The notes under the pieces: generated by a model
Told to the model about the DNA's origin: nothing
The model's input: the letters and a program-made list of their open reading frames with translations, nothing else
The model's database searches: none
Shown here: positions 26,138 to 33,048 of the stretch, piece after piece
Numbering within the stretch: the first letter of the stretch is position 1
Layout: the number at the start of each line of letters is the position of its first letter
Origin: Fonticula alba ATCC 38817
Taxonomy: Eukaryota; Protista; Nucleariida
Strand: one strand, 5' to 3'
Length of the DNA: 64,000 nucleotides
NCBI GenBank assembly: GCA_000388065.2
Contig: KB932205.1
Made by a program: the position numbers and the translations under genes

Positions 26138-28692
26138 ATGGCGATGCGTATCCCCAAGTCCGGCCTGTCCGAGCTCCTCAAGGATGGCTACAAGGTGCGC
26201 GAGCCTGCCGGCTTGCTTCGCCCCTCTTGCCTGTGCTTCTCGCGTGTTGCTGACCTGCATCTGCCCCGCCCCCTCCTCACAGCACCACCAGGGCCTTGAG
26301 GAGGCCGTCCTGCGCAACATCCGCGCTTGCCGTGAGCTTTCTGCCGTTACCCGCACCTCTCTCGGTCCCAACGGTCCGTGGCCTCTTGCCTGCCCTCTGC
26401 TCCCTGCCTCGGCCCTCCGCACGCCTGTCGCCGCAGGAACTGACGCTGTCCTCCCCCTCTGTCTACATTGCTGGAAATTCCAACCACCCGCACGCACATG
26501 CACACACACACAGGCAAGAACAAGCTGATTGTCAACAACCTCGAGAAGCTGTTCATCACCAACGACGCCGCCACCATCATTCAGGAGATGGACGTCATCC
26601 ACCCGGCTGCCAAGCTGATCGTCATGGCCACCGAGCAGCAGCGCAAGGAGGTTGGCGATGGCTCCAACCTGGTGTGCGTCCTGGCCGGCGAGTTCCTCAA
26701 CCAGGCCGACGAGCTCCTCCGCATGGGCCTCCATGCCACCGACATCACCGAGGCCTACAGCCGTGCCTCCAAGAAGGCGCTCGAGCTGCTGGAGAGTGCG
26801 TGCCCCGCTCCCTCTTTCGCCCCTACCCGCCGTCTCCCCTCGGCCATCGCGGGGGCCTCCCACGCCTCCATGGTCTGCCCCCTTGCGCGCCTCCCTGGCT
26901 GACAATGATCTTCCCCCCTGCGGCGACCGGCCCTGCTCCAAACTCAACGTCCAGCCCTCGTTGTCAAGAAGGACATCGATGTCACCGATCGCGATGGCCT
27001 GATCGCCGCCGTTAAGTCCTCCATCAGCAGCAAGCAGGTATGACAGCCCGGTCCCCCTCGGCCCTCCCCATCCACACATACGCCCCGGGGGCCTCCCGGT
27101 GAGAGAAGCCAGTGGTCCAGCCGCGGCTCCCATATGCTAACCACAAGCACTCCCCGTCCGTCCGCCCGCCCGCCCGCCCGCCCGATGTGCCTGGTCCTGG
27201 CGACGCCGCCCGCGCGCATTCCAGTATGGCAACGAGGACTTCCTCAGCGCCCTTGTTGTGGACGCCTGCATGGCGGTCCTCCCCAAGGTCCCGGCCAACT
27301 TCAACGTGGACAATGTCCGCACCATCAAGATCATGGGCAGCTCGCTGAACAACAGCACCTTCGTTCGCGGCATGGTCATCGACCGCCAGCCGGATAGCAC
27401 CATCAAGAAGGCCACCAATGCCAAGGTTGCCGTGTTCACCTGCCCGCTGGACATCTCCCGCACCGAGACCAAGGGCACCGTGCTGATCCACAACTCGGAG
27501 GATCTGATGAAGTTCTCCCGCGACGAGGAGGCCCAGCTGGAGGGCGCCATCAAGGAGATCGCCGACGCCGGCATCAAGGTCCTGGTCACCGGGTCCAGCA
27601 TCGGCGAGCTCGCCCTGCACTACATCAACCGGTACAACCTGATCGCCGTCAAGGTTCTGTCCAAGTTCGACCTGCGCCGCCTGTGCCGCTCCGTCGGCGC
27701 GGTGGCCCTGTCCCGCCTGGTGCGCGCCCTCTTTTTTCTTTTCTTTTTCTCCCTCTCCGCGCGGATCAGCGGGGGCCCCCCCGCTTCGCTGTGCCGCCTT
27801 CCTGCCTGTCTGCCATCGCGCTGTGTGCTCCGCTCGCGGGAGGGACCCCTTCGCTGACTCGCCTGGCCTCGCCCTCTCTTTCGTCTGCGCCCCTCCCCCC
27901 GCCCCAGGGTGCCCCCACTGTCGATGAGGCTGGCCACTGCGATGTCGTCGAGACCATCGAGATCGGCTCCGACCGCGTGACTGTCTTCCGCCAGAACGAC
28001 TCGGGCTCCGCCCTGTCCACCATCGTCATTCGTGGCTCCACCCGCAACTACATGGACGATGTCGAGCGCTCCCTCAACGACGCCATCAACACCTTCCGGA
28101 CCATCGTTCGCGACCCGCGCCTCCTCCCTGGTGCCGGTGCCACCGAGATGGAGCTGTCCCGCCTGCTGGGCGAGCTGGGCGACACCATCCCCGGTGTCGA
28201 GCAGTACGGTGTCAAGCAGTTCGCCGAGGCCTTCGAGGTCATCCCCCGCACCCTGGCCGACAATGCCGGTCTGGATGTGCGTCCTTCCCGGCCAGCACCG
28301 CGTGCCGCCCCTCCCGCTCCCCTGCCTTCCTCCGACCCCTTTCATTGACCCTGCGCCACGCTCTAACTCGCCTGCCCGCCCGCCCGCCCGCCCCTCTTGT
28401 GCTGCCTCCCGTCCTGTGCCCGCCGCGCTCCTAGGCCACCGTCATCCTGGCCAAGCTCGGCGCCGCCCACCGCAAGGGCGAGTCCTCCGCCGGTGTGGAC
28501 ATCGAGACCGAGGATGCCTCCCTCCTGGATGCCACCGCTGCCAACATCTTCGACACCTTCTCCAGCAAGTACTGGGCCATCAAGTATGCCGCCGATGTGG
28601 CCATGACCGTGCTCAAGGTTGACCAGATCATCATGAGCAAGCCGGCCGGCGGTCCCAAGCCCCGCGAGAACGGCAACTGGGACGAGGACTAA
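26138..28692 (+). CDS. CCT8: Chaperonin CCT/TRiC subunit theta
   Basis: Exons 26138-26194, 26283-26373, 26514-26795, 26955-27037, 27225-27719, 27908-28276, 28435-28692. Motifs: GLEEAVLRNIRAC, LFITNDAATI, EVGDGSN, VLSKFDLRRLC, LLPGAGATE, VDQIIMSKPAGGPK, NWDED. Confidence 0.98.
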
Positions 28693-29623
28693 TCCGCATG
28701 TGCCTGAGTGCGCATGCGCTCACGTCTCCTCTTCCTCCCCCCCCCCTGCCTGCAGCGCCTGTCCCCTCGCCCTCCTCCCTGCTCCTCCCCTTCCCCCTTG
28801 GGCGCAAGTTCATGCGCGCGCATGCCTCTCTCCGGGGCTTGCGCGCCTGAAATGTGCACTCCCTTGTTGGCGTGTGACTCCCCTCCTCCTGGGCCGGAAC
28901 GCGGGGGGGAATGGGGAGGCAGGCGTCATGGGCAGGGCCCGCAGGCGTGTCCAGTGTTTCCACCCTGCGTGCCCACGCCTTCCCCCTTTTCCCCTCTCTG
29001 TTCCTTGTGCACTATCCCCCTCCCAAATAGACCTGATCTCTTGTCTTTCCTCACCTCTCTCCCTGGGGCTTGGGGCCCCTCCCCCAAAATGCGCGCGCAC
29101 ACATGCACGGGGATCCCCCGACTGGTGGGAGGACAGAAGAGGACTGAAGTGAGGAGAGGAGGGACATGGCGTGTCCCGTGCTGCGCGCACACTGCGGCCT
29201 CTAGATGTATATTCGCGGGGGGGGGGGGGGAGGGGGAGGGAGGGGGGCCGGGCAAAACCCCACCCGCGCCCGGCGCGCGGCACGCGATGTACCGCCATGG
29301 CGCGCACAGACACGCACTCAAAGGAGGAGGAGGAGGATGGTCGCACAAGGTCGGCCCTCGCAGCCACCCTCTTTGCTTGCTTGCCGCCCCCGACTCCGGC
29401 CACCGGCGCTGAGCAGACTTTGCCAGCGCGTTCACGCAGTACAGGCGGGAGAGGGCGGCCGGGGTCGGGGCCGGGGCCGGGGCAAGAGGAGAAAAGACAA
29501 GCCTCATATGCACATATGCAGGCCAGCTGCATGAGAGACGCATACGGAAATAGGGAGAGGGAGAGGGAGAGGGAGAGAGAAACAAGGGAGCCGGAGCTTG
29601 GCAGAGAAGGAGGGCGGGGGCCA

Positions 29624-30789
29624 CTAGTTGAGGTCGTAATACTCGCAAGTGACCGGGTTGTACATCTGCTCGCGCGTCGGGTCGTAGTAGTGCTGCAGGG
29701 CCGACACGTAGTATGTCCCGGAGTCGGTGTCGTAATCGTCGCCGGTGACTTCGTAGTCGCGACCGCGGATGGTGATGGTGTACACCTCGCCGGCGATGGA
29801 CACCACGCGGGGGGCAATCCTGGCCGTGCGCGCGCGATACTCCACCCCGGTGGGCTCCTTGTCCAACGGGCTCAGGGCCACGGATGGCAGATCCGGCGAC
29901 ATGCCGGCCGCCGAGGACTGCGGAGTGGCGGCGGCCGTGCTCGGCGCGGAGGTCTGGCTCCGGCGGCTGCTGCTGCCGGCGGCCGACTCCCGGTCAGCAG
30001 TGGCCTTGGCGGCGCCGCTACGCAGGGCCGGCCGGCCGCCTGGAGGGGTCCACGCCTCGCCACGGAAGGCCGAATAGAAGTAGATTACCGAAGCCGAGAG
30101 CATGAAGAGGGCCCCGGCAAAGGTGGGGGCCAGGGCAAAGCCAGGGGCGGCGAACCTGTGGCCGAGGCACACACCCCGGGAGCGAGGCATGTGAGTGGCG
30201 GCCTGCGAGGCGGAGGGCGGAACACCCCCGGGGGAATGGGCACAGGAGGAAACAGGCCAGAGTGGAGGAGGAGGAGGAGGAACGCACAGGAAGTAGATGG
30301 CTGCCCGGACGAAGAGGTTGTGCGAGAAGAAGCCGAGGTGTTGCACTCCAGGGAAGGGGTACTCCAGAAGGGCGGTGAAGACACCGGCCGCGCTGATGAA
30401 CACAAGGAAGAGGTCAGTGGGGGGATGAACAAAAAAAAGGGGAGACCGCAGACCGGTGCCACGCCATCAGGTCCGCACATGCAGAATGCGGCGATCTGCC
30501 AGAGAGGATAGAACATGCCGAAGATGCCATTGGCCATGTAGACTGCGGCCGGAGCATCCAAAGCCACCGGTACACATGCATGGCGCTCGGGGGGGGGGGG
30601 GGGGTTGAGGCAGTCCGAGAGCAAGGGGGAGGGCGAGCATTGTCAGCCTCTGGCACGGAGGATGGCGAGATCTGGCGCTTGGGCGGGGAAACTCCCCCCG
30701 GCAAGGGGGAGGTGGGTCGTACAGCCAGCAGCGCCGAGGCCGGCATAGCGGCCCCAGACGTGAAAGAAGATCCGCCGCACCTGGGACAT
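29624..30789 (-). CDS. CYBA: p22phox (cytochrome b-245 light chain, NADPH oxidase partner) with a Tyr/Asp-rich C-terminal module
   Basis: Exons 30789-30723, 30542-30479, 30392-30288, 30155-29624, all phase-consistent. Spliced protein MSQVRRIFFHVWGRYAGLGAAGFYMANGIFGMFYPLWQIAAFCIAAGVFTALLEYP...FFSHNLFVRAAIYFLLFAAPGFALAPTFAGALFMLSASVIYFYSAFRGEAWTP aligns with recalled human p22phox motifs GAYSIVAGVFVCLLEYP, FTRNYYVRAVLHLL and IYLLAAVRGEQWTP. Confidence 0.9.
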
Positions 30790-33048
30790 GGTGGAGTGTG
30801 GCAGCAACAGGGGTGGAGGCAGGGGAGGCGAGGGGGGCGGGCGAGGGGGAGAAGGAGAGAATGTGTCACACGCAGCGGCGGGGAGGGCGAGGACTGTGGA
30901 GGCGCTTCCCTGCGCGGGCCAAGCGGAAGCGCGCCCGAGATCGACCCCTGAAATGTGCCCAGCACGAAGGCAGCACAGGACCAGGGACCCCCCCGCGAAG
31001 GAGTCGCTCGCCCGGCAGAGGGGGCGAGCAGGCAGGCCCTGCAAGGGAGACCCCAACCGCCGACCGGCCCCTGCGGAGCCGGGGGACATATGAGAGACCC
31101 CCGCGCGTCCATCCCGGCTCGGTACCCCTCCCTCCCGCACCTCGCCGGGGCGGCCGGCCGGCCGGCCGGCCAGGACGGGGAAACATTGATCAGGGGAAGC
31201 TCCTTCAGTCGGGGGGGGGGCGGGGGAGGAGGGCGGGGGGCCGGACATGGGGCCCGCGGTGGGGTCCATGGGTAGCTGCCCGGCGCCGGTGCCCTCGTTC
31301 CCTGCTCCAGCCGCAGGGGGAGGACGGCCGGCTGGGGCGCCAGGTGCGACGTACGCACGCCGAGCGGCCGGCGGGGGGAGGGACGCATTGGGACAACGAA
31401 CAGCCCCCCCCCCCCCGGCCGGACCCACGGACAAGGCATGGGGGCGCCGAGACACCGGAGCCGGAGGTGGTCCGATTTTTGGGTGATGGGGGCCGCAGGC
31501 ACCGCCCAGACGCCCCAGCATGCCGGGGCCGGGGGATGGAGCCCGGCACTATTGGGCCGCGGACTTGCCGGCCGGAGGGGCGCCGTGCGGGCAGGAGTGC
31601 GCGGCCGCCAAGGATGCCGCCCCCGCGGCTGCTGCCCGGGGGGGGGGGGGGGGCGGCCAGACGCACAGGAAGCGCCCCGCAGGCGAGGACAGCGCCGCCG
31701 ACCGAGCCATCAGCCGATTAATAGGATGGCAGCACGGCTGGCCGGGAGAGGCGAGGTCCGCTGTTGGGGTTGGCCACTCTCGGCGGCTTCTCTCGGCGTA
31801 GGCCCTCGCCACCCGGATGGGGACCGAAGGCAAGAGCGGCCCAATGCGCGCCAGCGTGGACGATCCCCGGAAAGACCCCGCGCAAAGGGCAGGCAGCCCC
31901 CCGGCCCGGCGAAACAGCTGGGCCCTTCGTGGAAAGTACTTTGAACCGAATTAATATACCCCCCACTCGCCCGCCCTCAGTCCGCGCCGCCCGAGGCGGC
32001 GTGCTCCCAGGCGTCGGGCCGGCGCATTTCGGCTGCTTCCAAAAGGCACGAAAACGGGGGGGGGGGGGGGACATCGGGGGAGACACAAGCTGGCGGGCAG
32101 CCCTGCGGGAGCCTGGTTTTGTTGCGGATACGCCCCCCGCGGAAAGCGCGCTCTCTCGGCCAGGGCCATAAACAAAGGGGCCCCGGGCGCACGCGCCCTC
32201 CCGGGAGGCGGATATGAAGTTCTCTATTTTTGCCACCCACGACACAATGTAAATGATACAGGCTGGCCTCACAGCGGACCGTCGGCGGGGGGGTGGTGTC
32301 CATGCCCGAGTCCTGAAATATTGTGGCAATAATAAATGGGCAGTTTCCGCGGCCACTGGGCCGGCCTCTCGCCCAAGGAGAAAGCACCCGGCCGCCCCGC
32401 CCATATCCCCTGGCGGCCAAGCCCATGTTGGGACCCGGGAGGGGGAGCCCGAGGGCCGGTAGCACACGGGGTGCCCGCCGCCGCGGCGCTTCGCCGCCCC
32501 GCACCGTCCGTCCAGCTTGTTGCACCGGGGCCAGGCCAGCCCTCCTCTCCGGGGCCGGCGCCGGGGGGGGGGGGGGGGGGAAGGAGAAAAATGGACCCCG
32601 GGCACGGGGCATCCCCGGAGGCTGGGCAGGGGGAGAAGGATGAGGGAATGCCCACTAAAACGGCCGGAGAGTAAGAGGACCGCGCCTCATGCGCGAATAC
32701 CGAACGCCGTCACGGGAAGGGGCAATGTAAACCAGCCCCACGCCCGGCCCCAACTGTCCGGCCCCCCCCCCCTCCTTCGAGGGGGCGACCCGCGGCGCAG
32801 GAATGCCACCCATGCCCGTGATATCTCGCATGCACACCCTGATCCAAATATCCCATATCCAGGTGCTCAGTTAACAGCATTGCCATCTAGGGCCACATCC
32901 GGCCGGCAACCCTCCGAAGCAGGGCTCCAGACATGCATGCCCTGCCGGGAAGAATGAGCGCGCCAATGGCCGGGCATCCAAGGGGAGGGTGTGAATTTTT
33001 GGAGTGGGGAACGAAGATAAATGGCTTTCTCCGGGTTGAGTTGTCACA

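What the first reader, a model, noticed from the sequence alone, without database searches (positions are those of the whole stretch)
29624..29830. p22phox fused to an OCRE-like tyrosine-repeat module instead of the PxxP tail
Seen: after RGEAWTP there is a low-complexity linker and no PPxNPPPRPP. The protein ends ...GEVYTITIRGRDYEVTGDDYDTDSGTYYVSALQHYYDPTREQMYNPVTCEYYDLN, with aromatic clusters about every 8 residues. Known: animal p22phox recruits p47phox/NOXO1 SH3 domains through its proline-rich tail; OCRE domains (RBM5/RBM10/AGGF1) are YD/YY octamer beta-meanders that bind proline-rich peptides. Inference: a NOX activation interface of reversed polarity, in which p22phox carries the proline-reader. 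I know of no such fusion.
Basis: partly seen in the sequence, partly recalled or inferred. Interest (0 to 1): 0.78.

Follow-up and report, generated by a model that had tools for sequence, protein, structure and literature searches.

The report
Fonticula p22phox with OCRE-like tyrosine tail
The amoeba Fonticula alba makes a real, spliced mRNA for the small membrane partner of the NADPH oxidase (p22phox), and this protein ends in a tyrosine-repeat segment resembling the proline-binding OCRE domain where animal p22phox has its proline-rich docking tail; whether it binds anything is untested.

Summary
The gene is Fonticula alba H696_03345 (255 aa), on the minus strand, with four exons. RNA contigs from two samples splice all three GT..AG introns. 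They also run without a break through the tyrosine-rich tail and the stop codon.

Residues 1-124 are a genuine p22phox core:
- Pfam PF05038 scores 50 bits against a cut-off of 25.
- Human CYBA in the PDB matches at E 1.6e-12.

There is no proline-rich region. After a roughly 70-residue Ala/Ser-rich linker comes a roughly 65-residue tyrosine-rich segment.

Evidence that this segment is OCRE-like:
- Its tyrosines have a strict period of 8 (0 of 20,000 shuffles reach it).
- The last 36 residues align to RBM5 OCRE strands β1-β5, better than shuffles that keep every tyrosine in place (5 of 20,000).
- The three tyrosines crucial for proline-motif binding in RBM5 align to tyrosines here.
- The nearest structures to the ESM Atlas model of the tail are mostly OCRE families.

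Evidence against full membership:
- The Pfam OCRE score (17.8-20.5 bits) is below the cut-off of 24.7.
- The sixth strand is missing.
- AlphaFold confidence is low.
- No orthologue or second such fusion was found among 1.84 billion proteins.

Verdict: a real, unannotated p22phox variant with an OCRE-like tail, seen in one species. "Reversed polarity" docking remains an inference.

The parts
30723..30789 (-). Exon 1, with ATG at 30789-30787 (residues 1-22, start of the p22phox core)
   Evidence: The spliced translation equals P0001. RNA contigs join 30723 to 30542.
30479..30542 (-). Exon 2 (p22phox core, first helical hairpin)
   Evidence: The flanking introns are 30543-30722 (180 nt, GT..AG) and 30393-30478 (86 nt, GT..AG).
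30288..30392 (-). Exon 3 (p22phox core, LLEYP motif and third helix)
   Evidence: Aligned to human CYBA.
30038..30155 (-). First part of exon 4: the last membrane helix and the RGEAWTPP motif (residues about 80-118)
   Evidence: Pfam PF05038 covers residues 11-124. Human CYBA residues 77-141 align to query residues 60-124. Intron 30156-30287 is 132 nt with GT..AG ends.
29825..30037 (-). Ala/Ser/Thr/Pro/Arg-rich low-complexity linker (residues 119-189), predicted to be disordered; holds the only PxxP (PDLP at 166-169)
   Evidence: Composition, pLDDT 30-50 with no secondary structure, motif count.
29627..29824 (-). Tyr-rich beta-strand module (residues 190-255) with 10 Tyr at period 8
   Evidence: Periodicity reached by 0 of 20,000 shuffles. 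Seven predicted strands, at low confidence. Nearest structures to the ESM Atlas model are OCRE families.
29627..29734 (-). OCRE-like core (residues 220-255), matching Pfam OCRE profile positions 7-42 of 52 and RBM5 residues 464-495
   Evidence: Pfam 17.8-20.5 bits, E 5e-4 to 3.5e-3, below the cut-off of 24.7. PDB phmmer best hit is 5mf9 RBM5. Shuffle tests.
29624..29626 (-). Stop codon TAG
29588..29623 (-). 3' UTR covered by RNA contigs (minimum extent; the contigs are cut at a simple repeat)
   Evidence: table 8.
30790..30898 (-). 5' UTR covered by RNA contigs (minimum extent)
   Evidence: table 8 (records reach 30880-30898).

Best explanation
This is the p22phox/NoxD-type small membrane subunit of the NADPH oxidase of Fonticula alba (gene H696_03345).

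Residues 1-118 form the helical membrane core. In animals this core pairs with and stabilises the Nox catalytic subunit, and the fungal homologue NoxD is regarded as the equivalent adaptor. That pairing is inferred here by homology.

The C-terminus, cytosolic by homology to human p22phox, has no proline-rich docking site. It carries instead a flexible linker of about 70 residues, followed by a tyrosine-repeat beta-strand module of about 65 residues. The last 36 residues of that module resemble strands β1-β5 of the OCRE domain, including the three tyrosines that RBM5 needs to hold a polyproline-II helix.

The most likely role (inferred) is a tethered protein-docking module. It would present a tyrosine ladder and capture a proline-rich segment of a cytosolic partner at the oxidase. 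In that way it would replace the proline-rich-region/SH3 link of animals by a link of opposite polarity.

Shown here: the gene structure, transcription as one open reading frame, p22phox homology, absence of a proline-rich region, the period-8 tyrosines, and specific sequence similarity to OCRE.

Inferred: the fold, the ligand class, the partner, and any role in Nox activation.
For: Gene and mRNA:
- Searches give the gene model, and one search shows all three introns spliced and an unbroken last exon.

p22phox core:
- Pfam PF05038 scores 50.2 bits against a cut-off of 25.
- Human CYBA (8gz3, 7u8g) matches at E 1.6e-12.
- The ESM Atlas model's best structural match is the cytochrome b-245 light chain, with TM 0.63 by the match.

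Tail:
- Tyr period 8 is reached by 0 of 20,000 shuffles.
- OCRE is the top Pfam hit for the tail, at 20.5 bits and E 4.8e-4.
- RBM5 OCRE is the top PDB sequence hit.
- The Smith-Waterman score against RBM5 462-495 is 74. Full shuffles give 26.9±5.6 (0 of 20,000 reach 74), shuffles with Tyr fixed give 39±7 (5 of 20,000), and the reversed tail gives 39.
- RBM5 Tyr479, Tyr488 and Tyr495, shown crucial for proline-motif binding (PMC5127646), align to Y235, Y244 and Y251.
- AlphaFold strands at 226-229, 235-237, 242-244 and 249-252 fall in register with RBM5 β2-β5.
- 7 of 10 rows of nearest structures to the ESM Atlas model of residues about 197-255 carry PF17780.
- GC3 of the tail is 0.89, like the rest of the coding sequence.

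Precedent: a swapped SH3/proline-rich polarity has been proposed for the Ciona p47/p67 interface (PMC2121648).
Against: - The OCRE score is below Pfam's gathering cut-off (24.7).
- The protein ends at profile position 42 of 52, so it lacks strand β6 and the Lys453-Glu503 clasp of RBM5. The N-terminal extension of RBM5 is replaced by two further hairpins.
- Two of the five RBM5 contact tyrosines (Tyr470, Tyr486) are Thr226 and Gln242 here.
- The alignment is partly driven by the tyrosines themselves.
- Both AlphaFold single-sequence models have pLDDT of about 50 or less in the tail. They give no OCRE match with Foldseek, the Atlas shape search or VIA-align.
- No orthologue exists in the searched collections, so conservation cannot be tested.
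- No partner is known.
- It is a single species.
Confidence: 0.55

Rival explanations
1. The tail is a lineage-specific tyrosine-rich beta-hairpin segment that only resembles OCRE, by convergence or as a degenerate relic. It does something other than read proline motifs. Possibilities are self-association or clustering of oxidase complexes through a Tyr-rich beta-meander, or carrying tyrosine-based sorting signals (YNPV at 244, YYDL at 251) that direct trafficking of the Nox complex.
For: - The Pfam score is below threshold.
- β6 is missing and 2 of 5 contact Tyr are replaced.
- Two YxxPhi motifs lie in the last 12 residues.
- The low-confidence AlphaFold model shows no OCRE structural match.
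- No OCRE protein was retrieved at E<=1e-3 by exhaustive phmmer.
Against: - The non-tyrosine positions (D, SG, DP, N, T) also match RBM5 beyond chance when Tyr are fixed (5 of 20,000).
- The ESM Atlas neighbours are dominated by OCRE families.
- The three functionally crucial Tyr are retained.
Confidence: 0.3
2. The C-terminal extension is a neutral, recently acquired appendage without function. The p22phox core alone does the work, as in fungal NoxD, which I recall from memory to be a short protein (not checked here).
For: - No homologue of the tail was found anywhere.
- Fungi are reported to lack a p22phox orthologue with a proline-rich region (PMC2121648), so a special tail is not a requirement of the family.
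Against: - The tail keeps an open frame with genome-typical GC3 of 0.89.
- It has a highly non-random period-8 Tyr pattern.
- It is present in the mRNA of both samples.
- A random extension would not be expected to resemble a specific domain beyond composition.
Confidence: 0.12
3. The fusion is an annotation or assembly artefact: the Tyr-rich segment would belong to another gene, or be removed by splicing or early polyadenylation.
For: None was found. Contigs cannot exclude minor isoforms.
Against: - In each of four runs, contigs (two samples, one study) cover 30153-29588 with no joint and no differing letter, in line with the three spliced upstream exons. In two of the runs a single contig spans all four exons.
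- There is one continuous open reading frame.
Confidence: 0.03

Closest known systems
Animal and choanoflagellate p22phox (CYBA, cytochrome b-245 light chain; PF05038)
   Same: The membrane core is homologous, with the LLEYP and RGExWTP motifs. Pfam is above its cut-off and human CYBA matches at E 1.6e-12. The tail is expected to be cytosolic, and the role expected is that of a Nox partner.
   Different: - There is no proline-rich region (PxxP docking site for the p47phox/NOXO1 bis-SH3), which is reported as highly conserved in all p22phox orthologues analysed (PMC2121648).
- The stretch of about 20 residues at human 57-76 is absent from the alignment.
- The tail carries a Tyr-repeat beta module.
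Fungal NoxD/Pro41 (the p22phox homologue of fungi)
   Same: Both belong to Holomycota. Both are p22phox-type cores without a proline-rich region. Both work in a system whose activator is NoxR rather than p47/p67; a NoxR without SH3 domains is noted for this genome by an earlier, unchecked scan note. NoxD is described as the p22phox equivalent in PMC5611593.
   Different: From memory it is a short protein, but this was not checked here. The Fonticula protein scores better against the animal-derived PF05038 model than against DUF7727 (27.9 bits, cut-off 27). I could not establish what DUF7727 represents.
OCRE domain of RBM5/RBM10/AGGF1 (PF17780)
   Same: - Octamer repeats of aromatic residues.
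- Local motifs (YD..SG.YY, YYDP, YN..T..Y) in the same register.
- The three Tyr crucial for polyproline-II binding are retained.
- Predicted strands are in register with β2-β5.
- The ESM Atlas neighbours are OCRE families.
   Different: - The score is below the Pfam cut-off.
- The module is truncated after β5.
- A different N-terminal part (two extra hairpins) replaces the packing extension.
- Tyr470 and Tyr486 are replaced by Thr and Gln.
- It sits at the C-terminus of a membrane protein, not in a nuclear RNA-processing protein with G-patch, RRM or FHA domains.
Swapped SH3/proline-rich polarity proposed for Ciona p47phox-like and p67phox-like proteins (Kawahara and Lambeth 2007, PMC2121648)

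Membership tests
p22phox / cytochrome b558 alpha subunit (PF05038) | Score above Pfam's curated gathering cut-off | tested here: met
   50.2 bits against 25, E 3.1e-13, residues 11-124 on profile positions 7-140.
p22phox / cytochrome b558 alpha subunit (PF05038) | Significant similarity to experimentally solved p22phox, including the LLEYP and RGExWTP motifs | tested here: met
   Human CYBA chains 8gz3_A and 7u8g_B match at E 1.6e-12 in two collinear stretches.
p22phox / cytochrome b558 alpha subunit (PF05038) | Helical membrane core of p22phox shape | tested here: met
   Hydrophobic stretches lie at 28-58 and 68-109. The best structural match of the ESM Atlas model is the cytochrome b-245 light chain cluster, with 127 residues aligned and TM 0.63 by the match. 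My single-sequence AlphaFold model gives only two long helices at pLDDT of about 70.
p22phox / cytochrome b558 alpha subunit (PF05038) | C-terminal proline-rich region that docks the bis-SH3 of p47phox/NOXO1 (a feature of metazoan and choanoflagellate orthologues) | tested here: not met
   The protein has one PxxP (PDLP at 166-169), one PP, and no Pro run.
p22phox / cytochrome b558 alpha subunit (PF05038) | Forms a heterodimer with a Nox catalytic subunit | not testable with these tools
   The Fonticula proteome could not be searched, and no experiment was possible.
OCRE domain (PF17780) | Score above Pfam's curated gathering cut-off | tested here: not met
   17.8 bits for the whole protein, 18.5 for the last exon and 20.5 for the 78-residue tail, against a cut-off of 24.7. 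E is 4.8e-4 to 3.5e-3, on profile positions 7-42 of 52.
OCRE domain (PF17780) | Tandem imperfect octamer repeats with clusters of aromatic residues | tested here: met
   Tyr lie at 204, 213, 220, 227/8, 235/6, 244 and 251/2. Period-8 power is reached by 0 of 20,000 shuffles.
OCRE domain (PF17780) | Six-stranded antiparallel twisted sheet with a packing N-terminal extension (RBM5 451-511) | tested here: inconclusive
   The protein ends at the equivalent of RBM5 residue about 499, before β6. AlphaFold strands are in register with β2-β5, but pLDDT is about 50. ESM Atlas model neighbours are OCRE families in 7 of 10 rows, at TM 0.49-0.56 over 40-53 residues. There is no OCRE hit with Foldseek or VIA-align on the AlphaFold model.
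OCRE domain (PF17780) | Tyrosines that contact the polyproline-II ligand (RBM5 Tyr470, 479, 486, 488, 495; of these 479, 488 and 495 are crucial) | tested here: inconclusive
   In the phmmer alignment, Tyr479, Tyr488 and Tyr495 correspond to Y235, Y244 and Y251. Tyr470 corresponds to T226 and Tyr486 to Q242. The alignment is partly driven by Tyr, but it beats Tyr-fixed shuffles (5 of 20,000).
OCRE domain (PF17780) | Binds proline-rich peptides | not testable with these tools
   This needs binding assays or complex prediction with candidate Fonticula ligands.

The most novel reading that the evidence does not exclude
The tail is a working OCRE-type proline reader anchored to the membrane by p22phox. 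It recruits a proline-rich segment of the oxidase's own regulator (NoxR, the Nox C-terminus or an unknown organiser). Alternatively it is held in check by the protein's own TPPGGRP or PDLP segments. That would be a Nox assembly interface with polarity opposite to that of animals, and it would show an OCRE-like module working outside RNA processing.
Probability: 0.18. Interest if true: 0.7.

Novelty: new variant of a known kind. Interest (0 to 1): 0.45.

Why it matters
How the p22phox/NoxD subunit connects to cytosolic regulators outside animals is not settled. A 2007 survey reported that fungi lack both a p47phox-type organiser and a p22phox orthologue with a proline-rich region (PMC2121648).

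Fonticula is described as the closest relative of fungi (PMC6733946). A p22phox that carries its own candidate docking domain would give a concrete, testable hypothesis for a different way of assembling the oxidase.

It would also add a membrane-tethered context for OCRE-like modules, which have been studied only in splicing factors.

The significance is limited for three reasons:
- Only one species shows the fusion.
- OCRE membership is below threshold.
- No partner is known.

The gene is already public but is annotated only as a hypothetical protein or p22-phox, and the tail is not described.

Tried and rejected
1. Word-indexed homologue searches with the last exon, the core (1-125) and the tail (196-255, E<=10) returned only the protein itself.

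2. Exhaustive phmmer of residues 176-255 against 1.84 billion representatives gave four hits besides self (E 8e-20 to 2e-4).
- All four are giant repeat proteins (Big_13 Ig-like arrays, an archaeal pilin/LamG protein, and two unannotated repeat proteins).
- Rerunning phmmer locally shows the 86.6-bit score for P0002 is the sum of 42 stretches. None of them exceeds 6.7 bits, and the bias term is 66.8 (alignments).
- I reject these as homologues. They are repeat-amplified matches to one beta-hairpin (PRVVSIAGEVYTITIRG).

3. A metagenome scan for relatives found none.

4. AlphaFold2 without an alignment, for the whole protein and for the tail alone, gave pLDDT of about 50 or less in the tail. Foldseek against the PDB, the Atlas shape search and VIA-align wide on the tail model gave only weak, unrelated small beta folds (E>0.3, Z<=3.6). 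This is uninformative and does not count against OCRE. No alignment could be supplied because no homologues exist.

5. The language-model feature search of the tail gave no usable hit.

6. RBM10 as a second OCRE comparator is nearly identical to RBM5 in this stretch, so it adds nothing independent.

7. A control of the Pfam OCRE score with reversed or shuffled tails was not run. The RBM5-based shuffle test was used instead.

8. The literature search found no paper on Fonticula p22phox or on a p22phox-OCRE fusion.

9. The ITAM reading is rejected: Y244 and Y251 are too close together.

10. The neighbouring genes give no functional clue. A CCT chaperonin gene lies convergent downstream, and the long GC-rich ORFs tested elsewhere in the window have no Pfam hits.

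Full report
**What is there.** The minus strand of window 29624-30789 holds a four-exon gene with exons 30789-30723, 30542-30479, 30392-30288 and 30155-29624. Its spliced translation is identical to a 255-residue public protein, H696_03345 of Fonticula alba, which UniRef labels 'p22-phox'. The finding's coordinates (29624-29830) are residues 188-255 plus the stop codon.

**Transcription.** Four public runs (two samples of one study) hold assembled contigs that skip exactly the three predicted introns. The introns are 180, 86 and 132 nt long, each with GT..AG ends on the minus strand, so these runs contain spliced RNA.
- In every run a contig covers 30153-29588 without a joint, gap or differing letter.
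- That stretch runs from the last membrane helix through the linker, the Tyr-rich tail and the stop codon into the 3' UTR.
- The fusion is therefore made as one mRNA and one reading frame.
- Contigs cannot exclude minor isoforms or show the poly(A) site.

**The p22phox part.**
- Pfam PF05038 (cytochrome b558 alpha subunit) matches residues 11-124 at 50.2 bits, against a cut-off of 25.
- The human cytochrome b-245 light chain from the cryo-EM entries 8gz3 and 7u8g matches at E 1.6e-12, with the LLEYP and RGE(A/Q)WTP motifs aligned.
- The ESM Atlas model of the protein has the cytochrome b-245 light chain cluster as its best structural match.
- The alignment skips human residues 57-76, so the Fonticula protein lacks that stretch.
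- After RGEAWTPP there is no proline-rich region. The protein has one PxxP (PDLP at 166-169) and one PP.
[quoted passage not shown] Fungi are said to have no p22phox orthologue with such a region (PMC2121648).
- The fungal p22phox equivalent, NoxD, was identified later (cited in PMC5611593).
- Fonticula is described as the closest relative of fungi (PMC6733946).
- An earlier, unchecked scan note reports a NoxR without SH3 domains in this genome.
- The absence of a proline-rich region is therefore in line with the Holomycota pattern and is not surprising in itself.

**The tail.** Residues 119-189 are an Ala/Ser/Thr/Pro/Arg-rich segment with no predicted structure. Residues 190-255 hold 10 tyrosines and no other aromatic residue, at 204, 213, 220, 227/228, 235/236, 244 and 251/252. 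The period-8 signal is reached by none of 20,000 shuffles. GC3 is 0.89, as in the rest of the coding sequence.

**Is the tail OCRE?** Evidence in favour:
- OCRE (PF17780) is the best Pfam hit of the tail, at 20.5 bits and E 4.8e-4 for the 78-residue piece. Residues 220-255 lie on profile positions 7-42 of 52.
- The RBM5 OCRE domain (5mf9) is the best sequence hit in the PDB, although at E 0.46.
- In that alignment RBM5 residues 462-495 pair with residues 218-251, with 14 of 34 identical.
- The Smith-Waterman score of 74 is reached by 0 of 20,000 full shuffles of the tail. It is reached by only 5 of 20,000 shuffles in which every tyrosine stays in place. The reversed tail scores 39.
- The resemblance therefore goes beyond composition and beyond the Tyr periodicity. 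The D, SG, DP, N and T positions also fit.
- The RBM5 study shows that Tyr479, Tyr488 and Tyr495 are crucial for binding the proline-rich tails of SmN/B/B' (PMC5127646). They align to Y235, Y244 and Y251.
- The strands of my low-confidence AlphaFold model (226-229, 235-237, 242-244, 249-252) fall in register with RBM5 strands β2-β5 (470-473, 478-481, 486-489, 494-498).
- The nearest structures to the ESM Atlas's own model of residues about 197-255 are, in 7 of 10 rows, families that carry PF17780. These include AGGF1, RBM5, OCRE with G-patch, Cript with OCRE and zf-U1 with OCRE, at TM 0.49-0.56 over 40-53 residues. OCRE families appear again in the whole-protein search.

Evidence against:
- The Pfam score is under the curated cut-off of 24.7.
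- The protein ends where RBM5 has residue about 499, so strand β6 is absent.
- The N-terminal packing extension of RBM5 is replaced by two further predicted hairpins.
- RBM5 Tyr470 and Tyr486 are Thr and Gln here.
- AlphaFold confidence is about 50, and the model finds no OCRE structure with Foldseek, the Atlas shape search or VIA-align. Such a weak model makes those searches uninformative.

I therefore call the module OCRE-like and do not file it as a proven member of the family.

**No relatives.** Exhaustive phmmer of residues 176-255 against 1.84 billion representative proteins found only the protein itself and four giant repeat proteins.
- Their scores are sums of many tiny matches to one hairpin.
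- For the best hit, P0002, 42 stretches add up to 86.6 bits, none exceeds 6.7 bits, and the bias term is 66.8.
- I discount these as homologues.
- Word-indexed searches and a metagenome scan found nothing else.
- No second p22phox with this tail, and no orthologue, is available, so evolutionary conservation cannot be tested.
- No Atlas cluster combined PF05038 with PF17780.
- No paper in the held library mentions such a fusion or Fonticula p22phox.

**How it most likely works.**
- By homology, the core sits in the membrane with a Nox catalytic subunit, and both termini face the cytosol.
- The long flexible linker would let the terminal Tyr-repeat module sweep the cytosolic face of the complex.
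- If the module folds like OCRE, Y235, Y244 and Y251 would lie on one face and embed a polyproline-II helix of a partner.
A similar swap was proposed for the p47/p67 interface in Ciona (PMC2121648).
- It could also be an unrelated protein, or the protein's own TPPGGRP or PDLP segments acting as an autoinhibitory ligand.
- None of this is shown.
- My estimates are about 0.55-0.6 that the module is a folded OCRE-like docking unit, and about 0.18 that it reads a proline motif of a Nox-complex component.
- The rivals are: a convergent Tyr-rich beta segment with another role, such as clustering or YxxPhi sorting signals at 244 and 251 (about 0.3); a neutral appendage (about 0.12); and an artefact (about 0.03, contradicted by the RNA).

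**Verdict.** The p22phox identity is solid and already public. The OCRE-like nature of the tail is moderately supported but below family thresholds. The functional reading is untested. This is a new domain-architecture variant of a known subunit, seen so far in a single species. It is of moderate interest, mainly as a testable lead on how non-animal Nox complexes dock their regulators.

Noticed in passing
window 27683-28692 (+): The 3' exons of a CCT/TCP-1 chaperonin subunit gene (Pfam Cpn60_TCP1, E 1.6e-38). The gene ends at 28692 and is convergent with the p22phox gene, whose stop codon lies about 930 bases away.
   Followed up: partly
window 29542-29587 and 29454-29483: A (CTCTCCCT)n-type simple repeat lies in the 3' UTR of the p22phox gene, and the RNA contigs are cut there. 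A GC-rich CCCCGG-type stretch is matched by many separate 31-letter contigs at high depth, which suggests a motif repeated in many transcripts.
   Followed up: no
window 30264 and 30589: Loose ends of unrelated RNA contigs attach at a (CCT)n tract in intron 3 and at a poly-C run in intron 1. These look like cross-matches of other transcripts to simple sequence, not alternative splicing of this gene.
   Followed up: no
P0002 (2690 aa, from a 23.5 kb Logan contig): A giant protein made of more than 40 copies of a roughly 52-residue repeat (P.IV.VSGDVYAIAYRG.DGDG...LEFD) with no convincing Pfam family. It appears to be an undescribed repeat type. Its apparent E 8e-20 match to the tail is repeat-amplified noise.
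   Followed up: partly
ESM Atlas clusters, rows 2 and 7: According to the Atlas's automatic annotation, OCRE (PF17780) co-occurs with Molydop_binding/Molybdopterin domains in mostly bacterial (Actinomycetota) proteins, and with Cript in green-algal proteins. OCRE-like modules are therefore not confined to RNA-processing proteins.
   Followed up: no
P0001 residues 57-60, against human CYBA residues 57-76: The Fonticula p22phox lacks the stretch of about 20 residues that human CYBA has at 57-76: the alignment jumps over it. From my own knowledge of the human sequence, which I did not check here, that stretch includes the Lys/Arg-rich patch.
   Followed up: no
P0001, Pfam DUF7727 (PF24853): The core also passes, marginally, the cut-off of DUF7727 (27.9 bits against 27; residues 39-112 on profile positions 67-139). 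I could not establish what that family is. It may be a p22phox-related family of other eukaryotes.
   Followed up: no
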